64,000 bases of DNA from Scyliorhinus canicula (GCF_902713615.1 NC_052151.1:75984375-76048374); one strand, 5' to 3'; shown: positions 13,131 through 63,729, numbered from the stretch's first letter. Notes: generated by a model from the letters alone, not told the origin. A program made the numbers and translations.

Positions 13131-15872
13131 CCGTGGCCTATTGAGGGCCGCAAGGTGCCGGCTCTTCATATAGAGTATGGCTGTCATGGCACCCACAGCA
13201 ATGTGGCTGCCCCATTCACACGGATTGAACAGGGACCAATATGTGCAACCAAACAGAGTAGTCAGAGCACCAAGGGCAAACTTTAGCACACAACACATTG
13301 CAAAGCATGGCTGAACAAATTGCTACCACACCCTGGGAACGTGAGAAGTCAATTCCAACCCCAGTTGACCCCGAGTCCCAATACAATTGAAATTAGCAAA
13401 TAATTCTTAGAAAATACCCAAAGTCTTTGGTCCTCAGCCACCCAATAACTACAGTCACCAGGTTTGTAAATTTAAACACAATTATTTTTTATTAAATACA
13501 ATAAATATAATTAGATATTCAGCAATACAACTGGTTAACTATTATCTAATTCCTCACTCCCCCTTTTAAACTCGCCCCCGTCCCCACACATGCAACACAG
13601 ACAAACACAGAGGGAAAAGAAGAGTGTAAAATAAGGATGAAAGTAAAAGGATAAGAGTCTTTGTTTCAGATGGACATCTTCCAGTACACCTGGCCTCAAT
13701 CTAGGCCTTCAGTGCAGGTTTTTGTTTTAAATCTGTACTGTTTTCACTGTAGATTAATCCCAATCTCAAGACGTCTATGCAGGTTCAGAAAAACAGCAAC
13801 GAGGCAGTAGTTCTGGACAGACAGAGAGAGAAAGAGAGGCAGGCACTCACATATGCTCTTCTCAGGATCCAGGATCCAATGATGGTCACTTCCTGCGTCC
13901 TCTAAAAACCATACCACTTGGGTAAGACCTAATCACTGCCTGTCACCAGGCAGGCTACTGCCTTTTCCCAATTCATAAGCTACCAGCCAGCTAATTGAAC
14001 CAAATCCCTCTGATCTCTTGGATGCCAAACAGTCTGAGTTCCACCTGCCTCTCTTCCTGACTCATCATCCTGTGAACACTGTCCCCATCCCAGGTCGCTG
14101 GCATCTGTGGCCATTTTAAAGGTCTGGATAAACCCCATCCACCAACAAGGCCCTCAATCCTCGAAACTCTACTTGATGTTCTGCGGACCACACCATTTCC
14201 ACTTGTTTCGCAACATATTCACATGCACTGGATTTCAGACTCTAACTGAGCGAGTCTCCGTGGGTTTATTGAGATGGATGTTGCACTATTGGTTTAGAGT
14301 TTCCTATGTCTAAATCATGATTAGTTATTGAAGTGCACCCTGGTGCATCATTACAAAACTGCCTATATTTTCCGAGTATCTTTATGCGATCTTTTCTCTT
14401 TTCTTCTTCTACATGGACAAACTTGGCTTCTCGGGCTACCTGACAAGGTCCTGTGAGTCATTCCAGACATGTGGACATGTAATCCAGCATTGAGGACTTA
14501 TCCTGTTGTTTTAGAAACTTCTCTTTCATCAATGTTAATGGACCCCATATTTCTTGGCCATAAACTGATTCAAATACATGTGCTAAATCCACTAAATTCA
14601 TTCGGAGAATCTCTGGTGGCAAATAATAAAAAATCCAATCCCTGTGCCAATCGCTTGGACGTTCATGGCACAAGGCCTTAATCATAGTTTTTGAGCCTGA
14701 TGATATCTCTCCAAAGCTGTCTCTCCCTGATTTTGTGGATAAGAAGCGATTGATTTTAATAGTTTGTTTCCTAAACTATAAATCATATGCTGGAAAATTT
14801 TAAAACCCTGGTCAGATTGTACTTCTAAGGGTAGGCCATAGCATGTAAAAAAATACATCAACGTTTCCACTACTACTTTAGTTGTAATTGTTCTCACAAG
14901 TATAGCTTCTGGAAATTGGGTAGTCATATCCATGATTGTAGGAATGTTCTGATGCCTCGCCTTTGTTTTTGTAAACAGTCCTGCGCAATCTACTAATACC
15001 CAACTAAATGGTTCTTCAAACACTGGTATGGGTATTAAAGGTGAAGGTTTAATCATATGTTGTGGTTTACCTATTACCTGACATGTATGACAGGTTCTAC
15101 AGAGTCACCCTACATCTTGATGCAGTCCTGGCCAGGAGAAATGCTTGTTGACTTATGCCTGCGTTTTCTGAATTCACACATGTCCTGCCACTGGTATCTC
15201 ATGTACTTTCCGCAGTACTTCCCTACAAGATTTGGGTGGTGCCACTATCTGATGAACAACTGTTCATTCCTCGCCCGGAGATCTATGAGGATGTCTACAC
15301 TTGCTCATCAAAATTCCGTTCCTAATGTCATAGCACTCTGGAAGTCTTGAATCGCCTCAGTTGCAATGCTTGTGAGAGCTGACTGTACTAATCTATGCAT
15401 CTCTGGGCCTCAATTAATGAAGTCTTACCAAACACCTCCTCAGAAATATCCTCATTCTCAAGGATAGTTTTGGCTACTCTACCATGTCATTGTGGTGTGA
15501 CTTTAATCTTTGGTGGCGAACTTTGATTAGCCATTGCCCTGGTCACAGCACATGATGGAACAGTGTCTGGAAATTGTTGCTGTAACTGCTCTGTCTCCTT
15601 ATCTTTCCTCAGATTACCTCTGTAATCACGGGTGAATCTCCAAGCTTCACCCATCAAATCATTCTCCAAAAGCAGGTCTACTCCGTCCACTTGTAACTTC
15701 TTAACCACTCCGACAACTACTGGACCTGACAATAAATCATACTCCAATTGTATTTCATACAATTGAACTGAGATATAATCTCCACTTATCCCATTCATTA
15801 ATACCTTAGCTTTCATTGAACTCTCTGGAGGGAAGACCAAATCCCTCTCCAGTGAGAGAGTTTGCGTAGATT

Positions 15873-16155
15873 TCATAGAATCCCTACAGTGCAGAAGGGT
15901 GCCATTTTCCACATTGATTCTGCATCGATTCTCCAAAAGAGCACCCCACCTAAGCCCATAGCCCTGCCCTATTGCCGTAACCCCACCTAACATTTGGACA
16001 CCTAACCTACGCATCTTTGGACTGTGAGAGGAAACCAGAGCACCCAGAGGAAACACATGCAGACATGGGGAGAATGTACAAACTCCACATGGTCACCCAA
16101 CGGCAGAATGGAACCCAGGTCCCTGGAGCTGTGCTGCCATGCCACTCTGTGCCCC
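15873..16155 (-). mobile_element. V-SINE (HE1-like) with CR1 tail, inserted in the Gmr1-like element
   Basis: V-domain tctttggactgtgagaggaaaccagagcacccagaggaaac; tail catagaatccctacagtgcagaagg. Confidence 0.8.
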
Positions 16156-17007
16156 TTAAAATAGTTACGGGTTTGGCTACATCAGTTGATGAAAATGGGG
16201 TGACTATTTCCTTTTACAAAAACGCTGCATATCTCTGACCTACCTCATTCATCACACCTGCTCAACATTTACCTCAGGTTTCTTAAGTCCAGTTAGAACT
16301 ACAGTCTTCCCTTTACGTTTGTTCCCTTTTCAGAATCGTCCTTATGAACTCCAGTGTGGCCCATGGGCTTTCCCCACAATTTCCAACATAAATAACAAAT
16401 GTGTCCCAGTTTATTGAAATGGTAACACCTTGGCCTTCACCCTCAGTACTTTCCTTTGCGGTCTGAGGAGGGGATTCCGGAGCATTCCCAGCTATCCATT
16501 CCTCACCTTGGTTACCTGCCCTCCTTTCACTCTCCCACTTCCTATCCTTTTCAACATTATGAGGGCGATAAAACAAAGTTTTACATTTATGGATCAGCTC
16601 ATAATCGTCAGCCCTTATTGCTGCTTGTCCAGCGGTCATCAACCTTTGGTGTTCAAAATGGGTTGTATCACAGGGGGTAGGGAACTCTTAAATTCTTCTC
16701 AGAGAATGTCATAGCTCAGAGCCTCATAGGTAGTTTCAACTCCCAATGCTCATACCCAACTATTAAAATTGTGCTTCTTATCCCCTTCATATTCAGCATA
16801 AGTCAGTCTGGAACTAATTTGTGTGCACTGAATATCATTTTTTACCTCGTCATATCACTTAGATACCTCCACTTTTCTTTCGGTCACTCAGTTTGAGTTG
16901 CTATTTTCACAAATGCCCTAAAAAATGTTTCTACTTCCTTTTCTTCAAATTTTGTGAGGGCCTATATAAACTTAAACATATCACCTCTGGGTTCCATTCT
17001 AGGGTTA

Positions 17008-23044: not shown

Positions 23045-23356
23045 AATAATAGTAATCTTTGTTATCATCACAAGTAGGCTTACAGTAACAGTGCAATGAA
23101 GTTGCTGTGAAAATTCCCTTGTCGCCACATTCTGGCACCTGTTCGGGCACACTGAGGGAGAATTCAGAATGTCCAAATGACCTAACAGCACGTCTTTCAG
23201 GACTTGTGGGAGGAAACTGGAGCACCTGGAGGAAATCCACGCAGACACAGGGAGAACATAGAGACTCCATACAGACAGTGACCCAAGCCGGCAACCGAAC
23301 CTTGGAGCTTGGAGCTGTGAAGCAACAGTGCTATCCACTGTGCTACCGTGCCGCCC
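23043..23356 (-). mobile_element. V-SINE with Rex1-like tail
   Basis: tRNA-like head gggcggcacggtagcacagtgg, V-domain, then tail cagaatgtggcgac...tacttgtgatgataac. Confidence 0.8.
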
Positions 23357-30126: not shown

Positions 30127-32414
30127 AGGGCCTCAGGGGTTAGCTCCCCTTGCACCCCCGTGGATGAGCCCAGGGGCCATCAGGCACCCGAGGGATGTGG
30201 AGGCGATGGGGCCCGTGCCGGCGACTCCCGCAGGGGAAGTGCCAGAACACCGTAGCAACTTTAAAAAAAACAATTTCCAATTAAGGGGCAATTTAGCACG
30301 ACCAATCCATGTACCCTGCACATCTTTGGATTGTAGGGGGAAAACCCACGCAAACATGGAGAGAATGTACAAACTCCACATAGACAGTGACCCAGAGCTG
30401 GGATCGAACCTGTGACATCGGCGTCGTGAGACGGCAGTGCTAACCACAGCGCCACCGTGCTGCCGCAACGATAGCAACTTGGACTCCCCCCGCCACCCGC
30501 CTCCGGTCCCTGGTGCATCTAGTGGGCACTATGCCACCCGGGACACTTGAGCAGCAGCAGGATCCATCCAGGCCCGGTTGCCCAGAAGACGCCCGGCAAT
30601 GGGGACACAGGGCAGGAATCACAGCAGGCTGCCTCGATTCCTGCTGTACCATCTGGGGAATCGCCTAGATGTAGCGTTAGGGCCCGGAGGTTGGATACTA
30701 GTTAAGTTTATACCGGTGCAGGGCACAGTTTAGTTATAGGAGCTGGGGCACAAATCTGTAAATATTTGTTCACATTAAACACCTGTTGCCACCGTTACAA
30801 CCTGCCTCGGTGCTCTGTCTGATGGGTGCAAGGGGTGGGCTGGTCTGGGCTGGCTGGGAGAGGGGGGGAATGGGAATGCGCGGACGTTGTGGGTGGCATG
30901 TATTCTACACACATCCCTCTGCCCCCCCACCATCCCCACCACTGCCTCTCCCAGTGATTCGAAGGCACCGTGTGATGGAACGGCCAGCTCGCATGCAGGG
31001 ATCACCCAGGTGGACGGTGGAAAGTGCTACCATGGGCAGGAGTCAGACGTTGTCGTACGATGTGGAGCAGAAGAGCTGATCGCTGCACAGGTTGTCATCA
31101 TCCTCCATCCCATTGACCAGACCTGCTGTTTCTGCCAAACCAGGGTCCCCACCCCACAGTGCAACAGGTGTGCACCATGGAGGGAGTTGCAGGTGGGGTG
31201 TGGCAGAGGGGGGATGGGGAAGTGAGGAGGTATGGGGATGGGATGCGGTGTATGTGCTCCTGGCTAGTCCCCGCCTCCACCCTTTCAAGTTGTTGAGCCG
31301 GGAGGTGGTCAGGGTGTCTCATGCGTGTTGGCCCTGGCACACACGTCGTGTGGTCTCCCGTGCCTTCCTGGGCACCATGTCCTGCCACCCTTGCCCTCCT
31401 CCGTATCCTCCTCATCAGACGAGGCCTTGCGTTTCTCCTCCTCCTCCAGCACATTGCCCCTCTGTTGTACGATGTTGTCGAGGACACAGCAGACTGCCAC
31501 AATGCGGGCGACCCTCCAAGCGTTATACTGGAAGGCCCCTCCAGAGCGGCCCAGGCAGCAGAATCGCATATTCAGGAGATGGAAGCATCATTCAATCATG
31601 GACTCGGTCGCTTCATGGGTGTCGTTGTCGCTTGTTTCTGCATCGGTCTATGGGCTCTGAATAGGTTTCATCAGCCACGATTGCAATGGATCACCCCTGT
31701 CGTCCAGGAGCCAACACTCCCAGCTGGGGAGGCTTCTCGAACATCTCAGGAATCGTTGGGTATGCCAGGTTGAAGGCGTTGTGAACACCATCCGGGACAC
31801 ACGAGGACTCATGTAGCGCCTCCTTGGCACCTCCTCGTCCTCGGCCTCTTGGGCAGCCACCTCCCCAACCTGGGCGGCTGCCACTTGTCCCACTGCTGCA
31901 CACTCTGCTGCGGCAGCTTCGTCCTCCTCGAGTAGCGCCCCCTCGTACAGCCACAGGGCATCCCCCAGAGCTGCGGCGACTAGGAGGAAGGCCACCATTG
32001 CTGGTTGTATTCCAACATCCATTGTCTGCAGGGGGTGAAAGGCAGACATGTTAGCATGGTGCGTACCCCAAGCCCAACCAGATCCAATGGGGTACATGGT
32101 GGCCCCAGTAAGCACTGTGGCCTCTGCCCCACATCCCCCCCCCCGCACCCTTGGCCCCGTTGCTGGAAGACAGTGTGGGTACCGTCGGCCAGCACTGCCC
32201 TCACCTGGGGTATGCACCGCGGCCCCTGTAGGTTGGGCCGTTGGTGGGTGGTGGCCAGGGGTGGGGGGGGGATGGGGGGGGGGAGGGGAAGGGTGGGGGG
32301 GTGGGGGGGAGGGGAAGAGGGGATGGGGGGGAGGGGAAGGGGGGGATGGGAGCACCCCACATCCGGTGTCACTCTGCAGAAGCAGGGGCCAAGGTGGGTC
32401 AGTGGACAGTCAAG
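30127..32414. mobile_element. Harbinger copy A: 3' end of accessory gene (+, to ~30705) and internally deleted transposase (-, ~32021-31309)
   Basis: Transposase motifs WLLDDRGDPLQSWLMKP and RFCCLGRSGGAFQY...IVAVCCVLDN. The accessory C-terminus QQAASIPAVPSGESPRCSVRAR is homologous to 35200-35098. Confidence 0.85.
30262..30471 (-). mobile_element. Short-tail V-SINE with 9-bp TSD
   Basis: TSD TAGCAACTT at 30253-30261 and 30472-30480. Confidence 0.85.
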
Positions 32415-34080
32415 TCGGACTGTGTACTAAAGAAGACAATACAGTGTTCCCCAATCAGAAACCCTGGCTCAACCCAAGGGTTCACTCCCTGCTGAAGTCC
32501 CGGATGAAGGCGTTCAAGTCTGACAACCCTGACCTATATAAGAAATCCAGGTACAACATACGGGAAGCCATCAGGGTTACCAAAAGACAATTGCATCAAA
32601 CTAGAGTCCCAGGCCAACGGCACTAACCTACAACGCTTATGGTAGGGCTTACACAAGATCACAGGCTACAAAGCGAGGCCAAGCGGAATATCTGGGGCTG
32701 GAGCATCCCTCCCCGATGATCTGAACAAGTTCTGTACCCGCTTTGAACAGTCAGCCAATGTATCAGTGCCACCTGCCCCAACAGCCCTGGACACACCCAT
32801 ACCCACTATTACAGCCTTAGGTAGGAGCTGTCCTCTTGAAAGTTAATCCGCAGAATGCGACGACGGGCCCCGACGGAGTTCCTGGGTGAGCACTCGGAGC
32901 CTGCGCAGACCAGTGGCGAGTGTATTCACAGACACCTTGCCTCCGCTCCGAGGTCCCCACCACCTTCAAGAAGACCACCATAATACCAGTACCAAAGAAG
33001 AACAAAATAGCCTGCCTCAACGACTACTGACCAGTGGCCCTGACATCTGTTATCATGAAATACCTCGAGAGCCTAGTCATGAGACGGATCACTGCCAGCC
33101 TCCCAGACGGTCTCGATCCACTGCAGTTTGCCTCTCACTGCAACCGGTCCACAGCAGACGCTATCTCCCTGGCTCTACAATCAACACTCGAACACCTCGA
33201 CAACAAGGACACCTACGTCAGACTGCTGTTCATAGACTACAGCTCTGCCTTCAACACCATTATCCCGCCAAGACGAATAACCAACCTCTGCAACCTTGGA
33301 CTTGATCCCTCCCTGTGCAGCTGGATCCTTAACTTCCTCACCAACAGACTACAATCTGTCAGGATAGGCAACAGCACCTCCTCCACAATAGTCCTCAACA
33401 CCGGGGCCCTGCAAGGATGTGTGCTCAGTCCTCTATTGTACTCTTTATACGCACATGACTGTGTGGCAAGATTTAACTCCAACTCAATCTGTAAGTTTGC
33501 GGATGATCCGACTGTGGTGGGCCGTATCTCAAACAACGACGAATCAGACTACAGGAGTGAGATAGAACATAGACATAGAACATACAGTAGTAGGAAACAT
33601 GCAGAAGGAGGCTATTCGGCCCATCAAGTCTGCACAGACCAACTTATGCCCTCACTTCCACCCTATCCCATAACCCAATAACCCCTCCGAACCTTTTTGG
33701 ACACTAAGGGCAATTTAGCATGGCCAATCCACCTAACGTGCACATCTTTGGACTGTGGGAGGAAACTGAAGCACCCCGAGGAAACCCACTCAGACACAGG
33801 GAGAAAGTGCAGACTCCGCACAGACAGTGACCCAGTGGGGAATCAAACCTGGGACCCTGGTGCTGTGAAGCTACAGTGCTATCCACTTGTGCTACTGTGC
33901 TGCCCTCTGTGCTACCGTGCCACCCACAGATAGATCACTTGGTTTCATGGTCTACCAAAAACCTCTCTCTAGATGTTGGAAAGATCAAGAAACTGATCAT
34001 TGACTTCAGGAAGCGTAGCACGACCCCCCTCCCCCTCCCGCACCCTCCCCTCCCCCATTTACATCATTGGCTCCGAAGTA
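32415..34080 (+). mobile_element. Rex1/Babar LINE (5'-truncated RT region); its 3' UTR resumes at 37589-37823
   Basis: FPNQKPW; [10 protein letters not shown]...LDPLQFA...[13 protein letters not shown]...[13 protein letters not shown]...KFADD. The 3' end has a (TCAA)n tail at 37804-37823. Confidence 0.9.
33567..33927 (-). mobile_element. V-SINE with CR1 tail inserted in the Rex1 RT
   Basis: TSD AGATAGA at 33560-33566 and 33928-33934. Confidence 0.85.
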
Positions 34081-34081
34081 A

Positions 34082-34549
34082 GGCGACAGGAGTTATCCGC
34101 TGAGGTCTTGGCTGATGACGCCTATACGGAAGCCTCAGACCAATGCGGAAACATGATACAACGAGGCCCATGCAGCAACCAGGGGTGTGGTGGAGCGCTG
34201 CCTTGGGCTCCTGAAGATGAGATTCAGGTGCCTGGACCGCTCCGGAGGGGCCCTGCAGTACCAGGCCGACAGGGTCGCTCGCATTGTAGTGGTCTGCTGT
34301 GCGCTGCACAACATCGCGATGCAGAGGGGAGATGACCTGCTGCAGGAGGCGGAGAGAGAAGCCAGTGGCAGTGGTGCCAGCACAGAGGAGGAGGAGGAGG
34401 AGGAGGAGGAGAAGGCTGGCAGAGTGGCGGGCGCAGCCCGCAGACATGACCCAGGTGCTGGTGATGTCCAGGAGGCGGCACGACAGACCCGGCGAGGACG
34501 GCGGGCACGCGACGCCTTGGTGGCAGCACGGTTCACGCATCGCATGTGA
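34082..34549 (+). pseudogene. Harbinger (HARBI1-like) DDE transposase, C-terminal part
   Basis: GDRSYPLRSWLMTP...*YNEAHAATRGVVERCLGLLKMRFRCLDRSGGALQY...CCALHN; one in-frame TGA at ~34155. Confidence 0.9.
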
Positions 34550-35097: not shown

Positions 35098-37358
35098 TTA
35101 CTCAGTGTCTATCTTTGTTGCCTTACGGGCCCTAACACTACGTCGAAGTGACTCCCCAGATGATACAGCAGGAGTGGAGGAGGATTGCTGCGAATCGCCC
35201 CCCCTCGACTCGCTTCTCCTTGGCTAAGCGTTTCCTGGGGCGACCCGGCCTTGATGGGCCAGGCTGCTCTGCGGGCGTCTCGGGTGACATTGTGCCACCC
35301 TGCTCTGCCTGCTGCCCACCCGATGCACCAGGGATGGGACGGGGGGAGGCCGAGAATTCCGGGACGTCCCGTGATGGCCTTAATGGGACGGACCCCGAAA
35401 CCTCCTCCTCCCTCGGGGAGCCCGGTGGCCCCCGGGCCTCACTTTGGGACAGAGGTGCGAGCGGGGAGGTGCCCCGTCGCACCACCGACACCTGGCGCTG
35501 CCAGTCCTGGAGGCCTGCAACGGTATCCACCAGGATCCGAAGGCTTGCAGAGACAAAGTCCAGGGAGTTAGACATTCCCGCCAGGGACTGTGCGATCTCA
35601 ACCAGTGTGTGCACGACGCCATCCAGAACATGTGTCAGGCGGTTGATGCTCTCGGCGACTGACTGCTGCGACTGGCCAATGACCTGCTGAGACTCGGCCA
35701 AGGCCCGCAGGGCGCCGGCAATGTCGTTTTGGCTCTGGCACATTGCTGCCTGTGAGAGGGCAACCCTGTCCAGGGCCGAGGATGACGCGTGCATATTAAC
35801 CCCAATGCCTTGCATAACCTGACCCATTGCCTCCACCGCGGATGCCATCCGTGCGGTGTCGGACTGGGTCTCTGCCATGAGCGGCACCACTCCCTGCTCT
35901 TGGACGCGGTTCGACTCCTCTAACAGCGTCTGCAGAGCCAGGAAGGCAGCCCTCTTCCCGTCATTGTTTCCCTGGGTTTCTTGAGGCATCGGCTGTGCGG
36001 GTGGGTTGAGAAACTCCAGGAACTCAGAAAACGTCTGGGAGCCAGCTGCATCCTGGGCCTGGTCTGGCCTCCGCGAGTCCGGGCCCTCGGTTGCTCCGAC
36101 CTCCACCTGCTGTACCTGCTCAGCTGTGATGTGCCAACCAGACTGTGACCCAGGAGACTCAACACTAAATGGGCCCGCCGGGGTGTGTGTCTCTGCGATG
36201 ATGGATGTTGTGGGAGATAGCAGTGCCGCAAGCCCGAGGTTTTCAGTGTTTAGGCCCTCCTCCAGGGTGTGGGGCTGCTCAGCGTCCGGAGGGTTGTCCC
36301 TGGCCATTTCCGGGGGTTGTGGTCTCGCAACCCTCTGGGCGTCCTGGTCCGCAGATTGGGTTGAGGAGGATGGGGCTGCCCGCTGATCGGGCACCCTCTG
36401 TTGTGCAGCCCCGGGTGAGGTGGCGGCAGATTCCTGTCTCCGTCTGGAGCCAGACGGCCCTGGTCATTCGGCATCACGTCCTAGGGAAGAGAATGAGACG
36501 GGTTATTTAGATTTGCTCGGCAGGCCGCTGGACGGTCCCAGTGGGCAGGGTGTGAAGGGACAGAGGATGGGGGAGGTGTCCCAGTGGGCAGGGTGTGTGA
36601 AGGGACAGAGTAGGGGGGAGGTGTCCAAGTGGGCAGGGTGTGTGAAGGGACAGGGGATGGGGGAGGGGGGTGTTTGTCATGCAGGGTTGTCTCACTTGCT
36701 GCAGATCCGCCAACCTCGCATAGCGCGATATCCCGGGTAGCAGACCCCCCAACAAGGTCCAGGGCCCTCTGCTCAAAGGTGGTGAGGGGGTACAGGTTGG
36801 GCGAACGCCCTCCAGTCTTGTGCCGCTCACGGTGGTTGTGAGCGGACTTGGCCTGTTGGGGGCGGGAACATAGGTAGATCATTACAAAACGGCAGGTATC
36901 AGCAGGCCGTTCAGATACTGGCACAGTTTGGGGGGTCAAGTTGTCATAAGACGATTGCATCTCTCCTCGGGGCCAGAGCGCTGGGTCTGTGACAACTTTG
37001 TGAACCATCCTCAAATAACTCTGCCCCAATCCCCCTCCACCCCCCCGTGCCGGGGGGAGGTGGGTGATTAAGTTAAGGGGGATGGATGGTTTTGACCAGG
37101 GGGCACCTTCTTGGCACTTACCCTGGCAGCCCTGGTGAGGTCGTGTAGCTTCTTCCGGCACTGCTCAGCTGAGCGAGGGGCCTGCCCCACAGCACTAACG
37201 GCAGCACCCACCTCACGCCAGGCCTGGCGTACCGCACTGGCAGGTTGGCGATGCCCTCTCCGCGGGCGGATGATGCCCCTCCTCTGCTCAACGGCATCGA
37301 GCAGCGCCTCTACGTCAGCCTCCACAAACCGAGGAGCAGCTCTCCTCGCCTCTGACAT
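35098..37358 (-). CDS. Harbinger accessory protein: Myb/SANT-like domain plus long coiled coil, 3 exons (37358-37122, 36852-36696, 36480-35098), two lesions
   Basis: Exon 1 is a Myb/SANT-like domain (PRFVEADVEALL...AWREV...QCRKKLHDL). GT-AG junctions are phase-compatible. One TGA (36466-36464, likely from CGA) and one extra base in the homopolymer at 35198-35204. Confidence 0.8.
36537..36668. repeat. ~45-bp tandem repeat (about 3 copies) in intron 2 of the Harbinger accessory gene
   Basis: gtgggcagggtgtg(tg)aagggacagagga/gggggaggtgtcc repeated. Confidence 0.8.
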
Positions 37359-37842: not shown

Positions 37843-38195
37843 CAGCATGGTAGCATTGTGGATAGCACAATTGCTTCACAGCTCCAGGGTCCCAGGTTCG
37901 ATTCCGGCTTGGGTCACCGTCTGTGCGGAGTCTGCACATCCTCCCCGTGTGTGCGTGGGTTTCCTCCGGGTGCTCCGGTTTCCTCCCACAGTCCAAAGAT
38001 GTGCAGATTAGGTGGATTGGCCATGATAAATTGCCCTTAGTGTCCAAAATTGCCCTTAGTGTTGGGTGGGGTTACTGGGTTATGGGGATAGGGTGGAGGT
38101 GTTGACCTTGGGTCGGGTGCTCTTTCCAAGAGCCGATGCAGACTCGATGGGTCGAATGGCCTCCTTCTGCACTGTAAATTCTATGAAAATCTATG
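37843..38195 (+). mobile_element. V-SINE (HE1-like) with CR1 tail
   Basis: B-box GGTTCGATTCC, V-domain, tail gaatggcctccttctgcactgtaaattctatg. Confidence 0.9.
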
Positions 38196-38213
38196 ATGTC
38201 CATTCTCCCGCAG

Positions 38214-39372
38214 GATCTGCAGCTGACAGAGCAGGCCCATCCGGGGAGGCCCCATCCCTCCCCTCAAGAGAGCACCTCAGAGTAGAGCTCTAAAGATGCC
38301 AACGTTACCGCGGCACAGCTGTCACCCCACTCTCCATCAGTGCAGAGACACACACCTCATTAGGTGACACTAGTGGCCAGGTGCGCCATACAGTTCAGAT
38401 GCACATCAGATGGAGGCAGGAATGCCCAGGTAAGACAGCAGTCAGAGGTCCACTAGGTCCCAGTCAGATTTTGAGCCTCTGAAATAGGTTTACCCGGAGG
38501 TGGTGCAGACGATAGGGTGAGGCCATGAGATTCAGAGGGGGTGTCAACAACACTCCAGCAGGTCCATAGCCAATTGGAGGAGTTCCAGATTCTACGGACG
38601 CAGGAGATGGTGGTGGCAATGCGTGGCACCGAGGTCAACACTGCTAGGCTAGCGACCGCAGTGGAAAGCCTTGTGCATGACGTTGGAGGTGTCCAAGGTA
38701 TGGTGCAGTCGGTGACAGCCAAGGCTGAGCGCCTCAATAGAATTTCCCAGTTGCTGGGGGACATCACCCAGTACCAGGTAGACCTCGTTGAGGCACTGCG
38801 GAACATTTTCCAGTCTTCGGTAGATGGAGCCGAGATGCCGCAGAGCATATCCTTGTCACTGGGGGACTTGACCCAGTCACACGTGGGAATTGCCAGGGTC
38901 CTCCAGAGCATGTCCCAGTCACTGAGGAGCATCGCCGAGGGTGTTAACAGCATGCTGCAGTCATTGGAGAGCCGCCAGGGCTGGCAGACCCAGATAGCTC
39001 GGGGGCAGCCGGGGCTCGATCCAGCTACTCCTCTGCCCCAGGGTAAATCTCAGGGCCATATGGGCACTGACTGGAAGAGTTGGCTTTGGTGTCAACCTGG
39101 AGTCATCCTATGGAGTGGTGGCGGGAGCCACCAGCTCCCTCGAGTTCCATCCCTCTGACAATGCCATGTCCCGCAGTCAGAACCCCGTACAGTGTGGCAT
39201 GGCGGGGCATGTGCCGCAGGAAAGTGTACCGGGGCCCTCCGGCCCCAGAGGACGGCCGCAATTTACAGGATACAGTAATCAGAAGGCTGCCTCCACTGGT
39301 GATGTGCACCCTGGGGACACACCAAGACACAGCAGTAGAGCACAGAAGGCTAAGCACGCCGAGGATCACTGA
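38214..39372 (+). pseudogene. Harbinger copy C: last exon of accessory gene (coiled-coil region), decayed
   Basis: Acceptor ttctcccgcag at 38213. LEEFQILRTQEMVVAMRGTEVNTARLATAVESL aligns with LEESNRVQEQGVVPLMAETQSDTARMASAVEAM of copy B. Confidence 0.8.
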
Positions 39373-54068: not shown

Positions 54069-56060
54069 GGGCGGAATTTGCTGATATTTTGGCAAACGTC
54101 AAGTCAGTTGGGAAAACTGGGGTGTTGCCCATGGGCAGCAGTTACGGTTTTTCCCATTGTATCTTTAACCACTTAGACAGGGGTACATTTTTCTCGGGAT
54201 TGACGCCACCTCGGTGACGGACTGAATCTGATTCACTCAGCCCACCTTCAGGCTGGGTGCTCCAATTATTGGGGATCTCCACTTAAACATCTCCCAGCAC
54301 CTGTTCCAAGTCCGAAGCAGAGAATGGCTGCCAGGAAGGATGTGCCAAAGTTTTCAGACTGAGACGTGACCAGAATGTTGGACGTGATGGAGGCAAGTGT
54401 CTGGATCTTTTATTCTCTGGCAGGGAGGAGACCCTCCAGCAAGGTTACCAACCCTGCATGGGTAGCAGTGGCAGCGCTGGGTTAGCGCCCACTCCCCATA
54501 CAGGAGGCCTGGAGTAAAGTGCAGGAGAGAATGAATAACATCCTTCGTTCAGCCAGGGTGAACCACTATTCTCATCAATGTCTGCTCACCCACTCACGCA
54601 TGCACACCTGCCTCACGGACTGCTTACACCCCCCCCCCCCCCCCCCCCATCTGTACCCTTGCAGGACCGGCTCCCCCACAATTGCTGTGTGAGAGCAAAG
54701 ATGGGCAGATGAATGGTCGTGTTAAGCTGCTCTGCTTTCTGCGGGGGGACGCGGGGGGGGGGGGGGGGGGTGCAGGACTGCTCCTGTGCTGAGGGGAGGT
54801 GGGAGCAAGAATTAAAACTGAGGACCCAGGACCTGATCGTCCATCTAACGAAACTCACGTGAGTTCTATCTCTTATATCCTTATACCGCATCCATGCACA
54901 CATCCCTCTTCGTTTGAAGGCAAGGGAGCAGCCACCTTCAGGCAGGGCGGAAGGGAGCAACCCGGACAGCAGCTCCGAGGAATTCTCAAAAGTGCACAGC
55001 TTTCGGCCGCACCCTCCACCAGCGCTGAGACACACACACCTCAGTGGCGCTTAGTAGTAGAGGGGCTTCAGGGTTGCAAACCCATGAGCACCTCACTTTA
55101 TCTGATCCACAGCAGGTGGAGGCAGGTACGTCCCAGAGGTCCTGCATTCAGAGGACTGCTGGACACCAGGACTCTATTGAGCTCCAGTCAGGTGACGTCC
55201 TTCTGGGGTCAGCCAGTTGCTGGAGTTCCAAAAGCAGCAGAACATCAGGAAGGGAGATCCACATCACTCCTCAGATTACAAGGCTGACTGGATGAGTCCC
55301 AATGCCGGACTTCTGCCCTGCGCTGATGCAGGGCCAGATTACAACGGGGCTTCTGCACCTCACTCCTCTGTATCCCAAGGTGGAAGCCAGGGGCCCTCGG
55401 GCACCTTTCATAGAATTTACAGTGAAGGAGGCCATTTGGCCAATTGAGTCTGCATTGGCCCTTGTAATGAGAACCCTACTCAGGCCCATGCCTACACCCT
55501 ATCCCCGTAACCCAGTAACCCCACATACCCTTTTTGGACACTAAGGGCAATTTAGCATGGCCAATCCACCTAACTTGCAAATCTTTGGACTGTGGGAGGA
55601 AACCGGAGCACCAGGAGGAAACCCACGCACACACGGGGAGAACGTGCAGACTCCGCACAGACAGTGACCCAAGCCGGGAATCGAACCTGGGATCCTGGTG
55701 CTGTGAAGCATCTGTACTAACCACTATGCTACCTTAGGGAGGAGGACAGGCTAGTCCATTGCCTGGGGCCTTCCAACCGGTAGGATCTAGGAGTGCATGA
55801 TCCACCTGACTCCCTCCCTTCAACTCCAACTTTGCACACCGAGGAAGGTGACGCTGCCACACCACAGCACCCCTAAAGCATGTTGAGGCCTTCTAGGCCT
55901 CAGCACTAGACCGCCCACCAAAGTCATCACACAAAACCGGTTGCTGTAGACAGAAGGCTGCCTTCACCTCTGCTGTGAATCCTGGGCAGACACCGAGACA
56001 TAGAGGTGGGTTTAGGAAGGTGAAGTAACTTTAGTTACACCGAATGGGCACTGGTGATGT
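54069..56060 (+). mobile_element. Harbinger copy D, decayed accessory gene with left TIR-like end
   Basis: gggcggaattt at 54069. Myb exon from ATG 54324 (MAARKDVPKFSD*DV...AWVAVA...KCR); C-terminal QKAAFTSAVNPGQTPRH at ~55951. Confidence 0.65.
55409..55733 (-). mobile_element. V-SINE with CR1 tail
   Basis: Near reverse complement of 37843-38195. Confidence 0.9.
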
Positions 56061-56402: not shown

Positions 56403-56706
56403 GCATCCTATTTATGCCTGCCTACTGTCATTAGATCTGTCCCTGGATGCACTGCCTGAGCTCCCTGGCCCACTTACCTCTAAACTTCCCTTCGGAGGCT
56501 ACGCGATAAAAGACTCAAAATCTATCAACTGGATCTGGTTAAGCAACAGTATTGGAGTTGGTTTCCAAGTTAGGGTGTGGGCACCAATAAACAGCAGCCA
56601 GGTTCCTGTTGTAAAACTCTCTGGCTTGACTTTGCGATGCTGGGCGGCAGATTGTCGACATCAGGGTACAGCGGTACGGCCTGTTCATGATATAATAATG
56701 AATTCA

Positions 56707-56935
56707 GGGCAGCACATGGTGCAGTGGGTTAGCCCTGCTGCCTCACGACGCCGAGGTCCCAGGTTCGACCCTGCCTCTGGGTCACTGTCCGTATGGAGTT
56801 TGCACATTCTCCCCGTGTTTGCATGGATTTCGTCCCCACAAGCCAAAGATATGCATGGTAGATGGATTGGCCATGCTAACTTGCCCTTTAATTGGAAAAA
56901 AATAATAATTGGGTACGCTAAATTTATTTAAAATA
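56707..56935 (+). mobile_element. Short-tail V-SINE with 13-bp TSD
   Basis: TSD AATAATGAATTCA at 56694-56706 and 56936-56948. Confidence 0.85.
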
Positions 56936-61541: not shown

Positions 61542-61871
61542 GGGTCACGGTAGCATGGTGGTTAGCATCAATGCTTCACAGCTCCAGGGTCCCAGGTTCG
61601 ATTCCCGGCTGGGTCACTGTCTGTGTGGAGTCTGCACGTCTTCCCCGTGTGTGCGTGGGTTTCCTCCGGGTGCTCCGGTTTCCTCCCACAGTCCAAAGAT
61701 GTGCGGGTTAGGTGGATTGGTCATGCTAAATTGCCCGTAGTGTAAGGTTAATGGGGGGATTGTTGGGTTAAGGGTATACGGGTTACGTGGGTTTAAGTAG
61801 GGTGATCATTGCTCGGCACAACATCGAGGGCCGAAGGGCCTGTTCTGTGCTGTACTGTTCTATGTTCTATG
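61542..61871 (+). mobile_element. V-SINE with CR1 tail inserted in the CR1 5' UTR
   Basis: TSD TACTG (61537-61541, 61872-61876); (TGTTCTA)2 tail. Confidence 0.9.
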
Positions 61872-63431: not shown

Positions 63432-63729
63432 TTAATAATCTTTATCTTTATTGTCATGAATAGGCTTACATTAACACTGCAATGAAGTTACTGTGAAAAG
63501 CCCCTATTCGCCACATTCCGGCGCCTGTTACAGTATACAGAATGTTCAATTCACCTAACAGCATGTCTTTCAGGACTTGTAAGAGGAAACTGGAGCACCC
63601 AGAGGAAACCCACGCAGATACAGGGAGAACGCGCAGACTTCACACAGACAGTGACCCGAGCTGGGTATTGAACCTCGCAAAGTGCCGTGGTGAAGCAAAA
63701 GTGCTAACCACTGTGCTACCGTGCCGCCC
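63432..63729 (-). mobile_element. V-SINE with Rex1-like tail
   Basis: Same structure as 23043-23356. Confidence 0.85.

What the first reader, a model, noticed from the sequence alone, without database searches (positions are those of the whole stretch)
35098..37358. Unusually large Harbinger accessory protein: Myb/SANT domain fused to a ~150-aa heptad coiled coil and conserved basic tail
Seen: three phase-compatible exons give ~590 aa after repairing one probable CGA>TGA and one homopolymer base. The Myb domain is followed by a disordered linker, then a long proline-free heptad array (TARMASAVEAMGQVM...SQNDIAGALRALAESQQVIGQSQQSVAESINRL...LQDWQ). A Pro-rich segment, RPGRPRKR and a C-terminal SxPxVxxGxxxRxSxRA motif follow. 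The coil is kept in diverged copy C (38541-39010), the tail motif in A, C and D, and Myb exons recur at 12918 and 54324, so the architecture is lineage-wide rather than accidental. Established: the characterised zebrafish Harbinger Myb-like partner is much shorter, binds subterminal DNA and helps import the transposase into the nucleus; plant Harbinger-derived proteins act in chromatin complexes. Inference: an undescribed oligomerisation/scaffold (end-synapsis or anti-silencing) module in a two-component transposon system.
Basis: partly seen in the sequence, partly recalled or inferred. Interest (0 to 1): 0.75.

Follow-up and report, generated by a model that had tools for sequence, protein, structure and literature searches.

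The report
Shark Harbinger partner gene with long coil
This is a dead copy of the helper gene of a shark "Harbinger" jumping gene, whose protein carries, besides the usual DNA-binding head, an unusually long 22-turn-repeat helical rod that is kept in every relative found (only catsharks and a houndshark) and probably lets the helper pair with itself or with the cutting enzyme.

Summary
On the minus strand, 37358-35098, three phase-compatible exons with GT..AG borders encode about 590 aa. They comprise a Myb_DNA-bind_5 head, a disordered linker, 22 uninterrupted heptads (154 aa, 35950-35489), and a Pro-rich, basic tail. The copy is broken by one in-frame TGA and one frameshift in a G run; reads from other copies carry one G fewer there.

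A DDE_Tnp_4 (Harbinger) transposase remnant lies tail-to-tail beside it, and the same layout recurs in two other loci.

The rod has no Pfam or solved natural relative. An exhaustive profile search of 1.84 billion proteins found it only in Scyliorhinus canicula, S. torazame and Mustelus asterias. One of these is an intact 623-aa RefSeq "uncharacterized protein".

Heptad phase, helix prediction and intron positions and phases are conserved down to about 30% identity. Indels are mostly multiples of seven residues.

RNA reads gave no splice junction. Selection on the rod is moderate (dN/dS about 0.5).

The function is inferred, not shown: self-association and/or transposase binding, plus nuclear import by the basic tail. 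This extends the known role of the C-terminal half of Harbinger Myb partners. It is a new variant of a known kind. Other windows of this genome carry similar first-reader notes (s1-198252, s1-262449).

The parts
37122..37358 (-). Exon 1: ATG plus Myb/SANT-like trihelix domain, ending ...RAAR in phase 0 with a gtaagt donor
   Evidence: Pfam PF13873 E=2.8e-11. It is 59-67% identical to the N-termini of the catshark proteins P0002 and P0001.
36853..37121 (-). Intron 1 (GT..AG)
   Evidence: Sequence read. Same position and phase as in L001, L002 and L003.
36696..36852 (-). Exon 2: 52 codons plus 1 base. It supplies a fourth helix of the DNA-binding domain.
   Evidence: 63% identical to P0001 residues 103-150. 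The AF2 model of the intact relative P0002 places helix 107-117 here.
36481..36695 (-). Intron 2 (GT..AG, phase 1), holding a 45-bp x3 tandem repeat at 36535-36666
36464..36466 (-). In-frame TGA stop, five codons into exon 3 (break 1)
35951..36463 (-). Linker of about 170 aa rich in Pro, Ala, Gln and Ser, with the conserved block LSPT...QQVEVG (36223-36095)
   Evidence: Alignment, composition. AF2 pLDDT is below 40 for the equivalent part of P0002.
35489..35950 (-). Heptad array: 22 uninterrupted heptads (154 aa). The most conserved motif, T-A-R-x-A-S-A-V-E, lies at 35857-35825. The array ends in LQDWQRQV.
   Evidence: periodicity; family alignment; AF2: two helices, 57 and 109 residues, pLDDT 83; profile hits only coiled-coil designs.
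35210..35488 (-). Pro-rich C-terminal region with conserved motifs (EARGPPGSPREEEV, PGASGGQ) and the basic cluster PSRPGRPRKR at 35263-35228
35198..35206 (-). G run with the frameshift (break 2)
   Evidence: Other copies lack one base at 35198 in all four runs.
35098..35196 (-). Tail frame: Ser-rich S-T-P-A-V...R-R-S-V-R-A-R-K motif plus stop
   Evidence: The tail is conserved in P0002, in L003 15537-16745 and in window copy D.
34082..34549 (+). C-terminal remnant of the Harbinger transposase, convergent with the Myb gene
   Evidence: Pfam DDE_Tnp_4 E=4.8e-9. 72% identical to the L003 transposase.
38063..39357 (+). Copy C: exon 2-3 of a diverged subfamily (closest to S. canicula P0004), decayed. 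Its coil is at 38529-39068.
30525..30798 (+). Copy D: tail and 3' flank only
31309..32355 (-). Transposase remnant convergent with copy D
12937..13155 (+). Solitary Myb exon, 39% identical to exon 1, with no coil nearby
54330..54557 (+). Myb exon of a further copy. A trace of the linker (QQVEAGTS) lies at about 55044-55295, followed by a LINE-tail repeat. No coil.

Best explanation
Window 37358-35098 (minus strand) is a decayed copy of the Myb-like accessory gene of a two-gene PIF/Harbinger DNA transposon family found in carcharhiniform sharks (catsharks and a houndshark).

The intact protein is about 570-620 aa and has four parts:
- A trihelix Myb_DNA-bind_5 domain from exons 1-2. By analogy with zebrafish Harbinger3_DR it binds subterminal transposon DNA.
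- A disordered linker of about 200 aa.
- About 22 heptads of alpha-helix.
- A Pro-rich tail with basic clusters.

I take the heptad rod to be a coiled-coil protein-protein interaction module. It makes the partner protein self-associate, so that two DNA-binding heads, and hence two transposon ends, are held together. It may also dock the N-terminal part of the transposase. The basic clusters (RPGRPRKR and the R/K-rich end) would act as the nuclear import signal that carries the transposase into the nucleus.

Shown here: the architecture, its conservation, the heptad periodicity, the helix prediction, the transposase neighbour and the narrow taxonomic range.

Inferred: oligomerisation, transposase binding and the nuclear import role.
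For: - Myb domain.
- Convergent DDE_Tnp_4 remnants in three loci (window A, window D, L003).
- Multi-copy family.
- Heptads: best period 3.50-3.52 in all six members, z 7-17, and 22 unbroken heptads in copy A. Indels are mostly multiples of 7 (7, 14, 42), with a few of 4 that may be alignment artefacts. There are 0-3 Pro in the coil, against 8-18% Pro in the flanks.
- AF2 predicts helices 4-60 and 64-172 at pLDDT 83.
- The PDB profile search hits only coiled-coil designs and coiled-coil proteins.
- Periodicity is retained in members that are only 25-35% identical with saturated synonymous sites. dN/dS of the coil is 0.2-0.8.
- Intact ORFs exist in S. canicula (P0002, 623 aa; L003 exon 3) and in M. 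asterias (P0003).
- Intron positions and phases are conserved in five copies from three species.
- Literature: the Myb partner binds subterminal DNA and imports the transposase (PMC9392472, PMC9710019). The C-terminal parts of ALP2, HDP2, NAIF1 and Ping Myb bind the nuclease, and ALP2 has a predicted C-terminal coiled coil (PMC7282668).
Against: - No RNA junction reads support the splicing. Introns are covered as deeply as exons and exon 1 is almost uncovered.
- dN/dS of the coil is only moderately below 1. The linker block and the C-terminal region are near 1.
- No TIRs or target-site duplication were found around this copy.
- No intact transposase was available, so a matching interaction surface could not be examined.
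- AF2 was run on a monomer only.
- The coil can grow by 42-bp tandem duplication, so part of the 'multiples of 7' pattern may be mutational rather than selected.
Confidence: 0.65

Rival explanations
1. The heptad array has no specific function. It is a repeat of 7 or 14 codons, born as a minisatellite, that expanded inside a disordered tail and is tolerated. Its periodicity reflects its origin by tandem duplication, not selection for a coiled coil.
For: - A 42-bp x3.9 tandem repeat lies inside the coil of the Mustelus copy.
- Short 7-aa repeats occur in P0006 and P0008.
- Earlier scan notes report large heptad expansions elsewhere in this genome.
- dN/dS is about 0.5, and near 1 in the flanks.
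Against: - Copy A's coil has no DNA-level repeat, yet keeps 22 in-phase heptads.
- The N-terminal third of the coil (TARVASAVE block) is the best conserved part of exon 3 and is not repetitive.
- Members at 25-35% identity all keep period 3.50-3.52 with z 7-17. Neutral drift at saturated dS would erase that.
Confidence: 0.15
2. The family is a domesticated host gene (like MSANTD or NAIF1) rather than a transposon gene, and the window holds a pseudogene copy of it.
For: - RefSeq annotates intact members as genes with isoforms (LOC119953007).
- The Mustelus gene L002 has no transposase within 8 kb.
- Vertebrates have repeatedly domesticated Harbinger Myb genes (PMC9392472).
Against: - Many diverged, decayed copies exist, several within this window alone.
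- Read and contig pile-ups include many records at 90-95% likeness.
- Transposase remnants sit in the same convergent layout in three loci.
- Gene models such as P0001 and P0004 are chimeras stitched across separate copies.
- No relatives were found outside three closely related shark genera.
Confidence: 0.08
3. Exon 3 is not part of the Myb gene. It is a separate ORF of the element, or the Myb exons end in a short protein.
For: No splice junction reads were found. Contigs span the exon-intron borders unspliced.
Against: - Exon 3 has no start codon context of its own.
- Intron positions, phases and GT..AG borders are conserved between subfamilies and genera.
- Independent gene models in three species join the same three exons.
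- This copy is dead and its family is barely expressed in the runs read, so absence of junctions is weak evidence.
Confidence: 0.05

Closest known systems
Myb-like accessory protein of zebrafish Harbinger3_DR, and its domesticated relative NAIF1
   Same: Both are the second gene of a two-gene Harbinger element, with an N-terminal SANT/Myb/trihelix domain. The known roles are binding subterminal repeats, binding the transposase and importing it into the nucleus (as summarised in PMC9392472 and PMC9710019).
   Different: The typical partner is ~300-400 aa (PMC9710019), whereas the shark protein is 570-623 aa. The 22-heptad rod and the tail motifs have no detectable counterpart outside three shark genera.
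Arabidopsis ALP2, HDP2 and rice Ping ORF1 (Harbinger Myb partners and their derivatives)
   Same: In these proteins the C-terminal part mediates binding to the nuclease partner. ALP2 has a predicted coiled coil in its C-terminus, residues 235-261 (PMC7282668).
   Different: The ALP2 coil is about 27 residues and lies outside the blocks conserved with transposon proteins. Here the coil is 154 residues and is the conserved core of exon 3. There is no sequence similarity between the two.
MSANTD1-4 (vertebrate genes domesticated from Harbinger Myb-like genes)
   Same: They share the Myb_DNA-bind_5-type domain. MSANTD1, 3 and 4 are three-exon genes, and MSANTD2 reaches 559 aa (PMC9392472). From memory only, the official name of MSANTD4 includes 'with coiled-coils'.
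   Different: The MSANTD genes are single-copy and syntenic across jawed vertebrates. This family is multi-copy, decaying, next to transposase remnants, and restricted to a few sharks. I could not fetch MSANTD4 to compare the coils.
De novo designed coiled-coil bundles and barrels (sc-apCC-6, CC-Hex, CC-Type2)
   Same: These are the best sequence-profile matches in the PDB (E down to 2e-19). They share the L/I/V core with small Ala/Ser flanks (for example I-A-Q-S-L).
   Different: The match is convergent heptad composition, not homology. It says only that the sequence looks like a coiled coil with a broadened hydrophobic seam.

Membership tests
PIF/Harbinger two-gene transposon: Myb-like accessory gene | N-terminal SANT/Myb/trihelix DNA-binding domain | tested here: met
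   PF13873 at E=2.8e-11 on exon 1. The domain is also found in P0002, P0003 and P0004. AF2 gives an ordered helical domain at residues 9-119 of P0002.
PIF/Harbinger two-gene transposon: Myb-like accessory gene | Encoded in the same element as a DDE_Tnp_4 transposase | tested here: met
   Convergent DDE_Tnp_4 remnants lie 550-700 bp from the stop codon in window copy A, window copy D and L003. All three transposases are truncated, two of them by LINE insertions.
PIF/Harbinger two-gene transposon: Myb-like accessory gene | Terminal inverted repeats and a 3-bp (TWA) target-site duplication | tested here: inconclusive
   The inverted-repeat search around copy A and around L002 gave no credible TIR pair. 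The element is truncated on the transposase side.
PIF/Harbinger two-gene transposon: Myb-like accessory gene | Dispersed, multi-copy, with decayed copies | tested here: met
   There are at least five partial copies in this window and several in L001 and L003. Read and contig pile-ups are mostly 90-99% alike.
PIF/Harbinger two-gene transposon: Myb-like accessory gene | Binds the transposase and subterminal DNA, and imports the transposase | not testable with these tools
   Needs biochemistry or cell assays.
Coiled coil | Sustained heptad periodicity of hydrophobic residues at the a and d positions | tested here: met
   Period 3.50-3.52, z 7-17 in six members. Copy A has 22 in-phase heptads with 64% and 82% core occupancy.
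Coiled coil | Long uninterrupted alpha-helix | tested here: met
   AF2 predicts helices of 57 and 109 residues at pLDDT 83, above 90 over the second helix. The same layout is seen in P0002.
Coiled coil | Oligomerisation (state and orientation) | not testable with these tools
   Only monomer prediction was available.
Domesticated Myb-like host gene (MSANTD/NAIF1 type) | Single copy at a conserved syntenic position under strong purifying selection | tested here: not met
   The family is multi-copy with decayed copies next to transposase remnants. dN/dS of exon 3 is 0.5-0.9 overall.
AT-hook | R-G-R-P core flanked by basic residues | tested here: inconclusive
   By eye only. Copy A has P-G-R-P-R-K-R, P0002 has P-C-R-P-R-K-R, and the Mustelus protein has S-R-G-R-P-P-R. 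No model was run.

The most novel reading that the evidence does not exclude
The 22-heptad rod is a shark-lineage invention that turns the Harbinger Myb partner into a long dimeric or higher-order tether. It would bring both transposon ends, or a chromatin partner, together. The same kind of Myb-partner coiled-coil tail would have been reused by the shark zinc-finger gene family noted elsewhere in this genome. In that case it would be a transposon-born oligomerisation module comparable in role to SCAN or BTB domains of host transcription factors.
Probability: 0.12. Interest if true: 0.75.

Novelty: new variant of a known kind. Interest (0 to 1): 0.4.

Why it matters
How the two Harbinger proteins assemble on the two transposon ends is still poorly understood. 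[quoted passage not shown]

A family in which that half has grown into a conserved rod about 23 nm long, flanked by disordered arms, is a natural experiment on that question. Intact copies are available in the small-spotted catshark, a laboratory model. The coil can be expressed, sized and deleted with ordinary methods.

The rod also shows how heptad codons behave as an expandable repeat within a coding sequence (42-bp units in Mustelus). Beyond transposon biology the finding is of modest interest.

Tried and rejected
- **Pfam on exon 3.** Only sub-threshold coiled-coil-type hits (TMP_2, Mce4_CUP1, HAUS1, Arfaptin). No family could be assigned.
- **Word-based protein searches.** They gave only 1 and 3 close catshark hits and say nothing about distant relatives. 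The exhaustive profile search was needed.
- **Foldseek against the PDB with the coil model.** No match, as expected for bare long helices.
- **RNA support for the introns.** No junctions were found, and coverage is low and as deep in the introns as in the exons. The reads tools are capped at one call each, so no second attempt on an intact copy was possible.
- **TIR search.** Nothing credible.
- **dN/dS for exon 1 as a control.** It gave 0.1-0.3, with much higher dS than exon 3 in the same loci. The L001 and L003 gene models are chimeras of separate copies (exons 7-12 kb apart), so those exon-1 comparisons are probably across subfamilies. I do not build on the dS contrast.
- **Link to zinc-finger chimeric genes from earlier scan notes.** None of the 21 profile hits carries zinc fingers, so no link is shown.
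- **Sinzelle et al. 2008.** It could not be read. Its content is cited only through PMC9392472 and PMC9710019.
- **Joined model.** I did not build, search or fold a joined or repaired model of the window copy. Exons were searched one by one by reference. The full-length fold used the naturally intact relative P0002.

Full report
**What is there**

On the minus strand an ATG at 37358 opens a 79-codon exon. It matches Pfam Myb_DNA-bind_5 (E=2.8e-11) and ends in phase 0 at a gtaagt donor. After a 269-bp intron comes a 157-base exon (36852-36696). After a 215-bp intron with a pyrimidine tract and AG, a long third exon starts at 36480.

The third exon has an in-frame TGA at 36466-36464, then an open frame to 35141. 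A run of G at 35206-35198 shifts the frame. The neighbouring frame, 35196-35101, encodes a Ser-rich, basic tail that ends at the stop 35100-35098.

In all four runs laid on the stretch, contigs or reads from other copies lack one base at 35198. So this copy's frameshift is private to it. I could not verify how the TGA arose.

Exons were handled one by one by reference. The naturally intact relative P0002 served for the full-length analyses.

**It is a transposon gene**

Directly beside the gene, tail-to-tail, 34082-34549 (+) is the C-terminal end of a DDE_Tnp_4 (PIF/Harbinger) transposase. Its upstream part is replaced by a LINE fragment.

The same convergent layout, with 550-700 bp between the two stop codons, recurs twice:
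- In window copy D, with the tail at 30525-30690 (+) and the transposase at 32355-31309 (-).
- In a Scyliorhinus canicula locus, with L003 exon 3 at 15537-16745 (+) and the transposase at 18268-17358 (-), DDE_Tnp_4 E=5e-12.

The window holds further partial copies. Copy C (38063-39357, +) belongs to a diverged subfamily, and Myb exons lie at 12937-13155 and 54330-54557.

The reads and contigs that lie on the stretch are mostly 90-99% alike, which indicates many paralogous copies. I found no TIRs.

**Relatives**

Exon 3 has no Pfam family. A profile of the coil plus tail was scored against all 1.84 billion representative proteins. It gave 21 hits, of which the credible ones with a source name all come from S. 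canicula and Mustelus asterias. The word-based search added Scyliorhinus torazame.

- XP_038632691.1 (S. canicula, 623 aa, 'uncharacterized protein') is intact. It shows the full architecture down to the tail motif.
- XP_078075436.1 (M. asterias, 572 aa) is a compact three-exon gene of 2065 bp (L002).
- The gene models behind P0001 (56 kb) and P0004 (13 kb) are stitched across separate transposon copies.

Both intron positions and phases are identical in window copy A, L001, L002 and L003: phase 0 after the R-A-A-R/G end of exon 1, and phase 1 inside a Gly/Arg codon. All have GT..AG borders. Exon 3 is only about 30% identical between the most distant of these. This is my main evidence that the three exons form one gene.

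**RNA**

Two oligo-dT RNA runs gave only 36 and 196 reads at 90% likeness or more. Coverage was as deep in the introns as in the exons, exon 1 was almost uncovered, and no joint appeared at either intron.

This neither supports nor excludes splicing. The copy is dead and the family is barely expressed in those samples.

**The rod**

Residues 172-325 of the exon-3 frame (35950-35489) can be written as 22 consecutive heptads without a single skip. Large hydrophobic residues occupy 64% and 82% of the two core positions, and Ala occupies 32% of the flanking position.

The hydrophobicity spectrum peaks at period 3.50-3.52 in all six family members analysed, with z = 7-17 against shuffles.

Most insertions and deletions between members are 7, 14 or 42 residues. 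A few 4-residue gaps may be alignment artefacts. The array has 0-3 prolines, against 8-18% proline in the flanks.

AlphaFold2 with the 16-sequence family alignment predicts two helices of 57 and 109 residues, at mean pLDDT 83 and above 90 along the second helix.

For the intact P0002 the model gives:
- an ordered Myb domain at residues 9-119, in which exon 2 contributes a fourth helix;
- disorder at 120-335;
- helices at 336-407 and 414-500;
- a disordered tail.

A family profile against all PDB sequences hits designed coiled-coil bundles and barrels first (E down to 2e-19), then chemoreceptor and other coiled coils. That reflects shared composition and rhythm, not ancestry. Foldseek found nothing.

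**Selection**

Pairwise Nei-Gojobori dN/dS values were:

| Region | dN/dS |
|---|---|
| Coil | 0.21-0.82, mostly about 0.5 |
| Linker block (LSPT...QQVEVG) | 0.63-1.15 |
| C-terminal region | 0.56-1.15 |
| Myb exon | 0.1-0.3 |

The Myb exon comparisons are partly across chimeric gene models, so I do not lean on them.

Comparisons between decaying tips overestimate dN/dS. The stronger argument is that the heptad phase survives in members that share only 25-35% of residues and have saturated synonymous sites.

Copy A's coil has no DNA-level tandem repeat. The Mustelus coil contains a 42-bp unit repeated 3.9 times. So the array can also grow by slippage, and part of the 'multiples of seven' pattern may be mutational.

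**How it most likely works**

Established knowledge (PMC9392472, PMC9710019):
- Harbinger needs both proteins.
- The Myb partner binds subterminal DNA, binds the N-terminal part of the transposase, and carries it into the nucleus.

Per PMC7282668, the region that binds the nuclease is the C-terminal part in ALP2, HDP2, NAIF1 and Ping Myb. ALP2 has a short predicted coiled coil in its C-terminus.

On that basis I read the shark rod as an enlarged version of this C-terminal interaction region. It would be a coiled coil that makes the partner self-associate and/or dock the transposase. The basic clusters (P-G-R-P-R-K-R and the R/K-rich end) would act as the import signal. These steps are inference; nothing here measures them. 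A role in synapsis of the two ends is attractive but untested.

**Novelty**

I found no paper combining Harbinger, Myb-like, transposase and coiled coil. The partner is usually ~300-400 aa (PMC9710019), though MSANTD2 reaches 559 aa (PMC9392472).

The finding is therefore a new variant of a known kind. It is a family-specific long coiled-coil module in a known class of transposon protein, restricted, as far as current protein sets show, to three carcharhiniform genera. Repbase and Dfam could not be consulted.

**Earlier notes of this scan (unchecked AI notes)**

- The genome is named there as small-spotted catshark.
- Other windows carry a '17-heptad coiled coil' in a Harbinger Myb partner, and large heptad expansions.
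- There is also a note of zinc-finger genes carrying a Myb-partner coiled-coil tail.

The first two agree with what I see. For the third, my profile search found no zinc-finger protein with this coil, so no link is shown.

Noticed in passing
window 33034-33900, 37843-38188, 55406-55733, 61546-61774, 23137-23356, 56706-56898, 63539-63729, 15999-16133, 30274-30464: A LINE reverse-transcriptase fragment (33034-33681, +) is followed by a ~200-330-bp 3' tail. The tail recurs about nine times in the window at 70-91% identity. Copies of it truncate both Harbinger transposase remnants and the Myb copy at 54330.
   Followed up: partly
window 36535-36666: A 45-bp x3 tandem repeat (91% matches) lies inside intron 2. 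This bin has the highest contig depth of the whole stretch in run X15, so the unit is probably repeated widely in the genome.
   Followed up: no
window 36223-35951 (linker block LSPT...QQVEVG) compared with L001, L002 and L003: This block has dN/dS of about 1 but clearly lower synonymous divergence (pS 0.26-0.46) than the adjacent coil (pS 0.35-0.66) in the same pairs. It looks conserved as DNA rather than as protein. Unexplained.
   Followed up: no
L001 10001-66269; L003 10001-23313: The public gene models for P0001 (S. torazame, 56 kb) and P0004 (S. canicula, 13 kb) join exons from different transposon copies. Exon 1 lies 7-12 kb from the next exon of the model, and in P0001 a last exon lies 45 kb away.
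   Followed up: partly
L002 11542-11704: A 42-bp unit (14 codons, two heptads) is repeated 3.9 times at 81% identity inside the coil of the Mustelus asterias gene. The rod therefore grows in two-heptad steps.
   Followed up: partly
window 37358 versus 38063: Copies A (-) and C (+) of two diverged subfamilies sit head-to-head about 700 bp apart, with a LINE-tail repeat between them. Copies D and A, with their transposase remnants, form a mirror-image arrangement around the LINE fragment at 32400-33900.
   Followed up: no
window 34400-34460 (+) and 31400-31450 (-): Both transposase remnants end in an acidic run (poly-Glu). This feature of the family's transposase C-terminus was not looked into.
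   Followed up: no
L002 1007-1260 (-): The compact, intact Mustelus Myb-partner gene has no transposase within 8 kb. Only a short DDE_Tnp_4-like fragment lies 9 kb upstream. It may be a Myb-only element, as an earlier scan note also describes for this genome.
   Followed up: no
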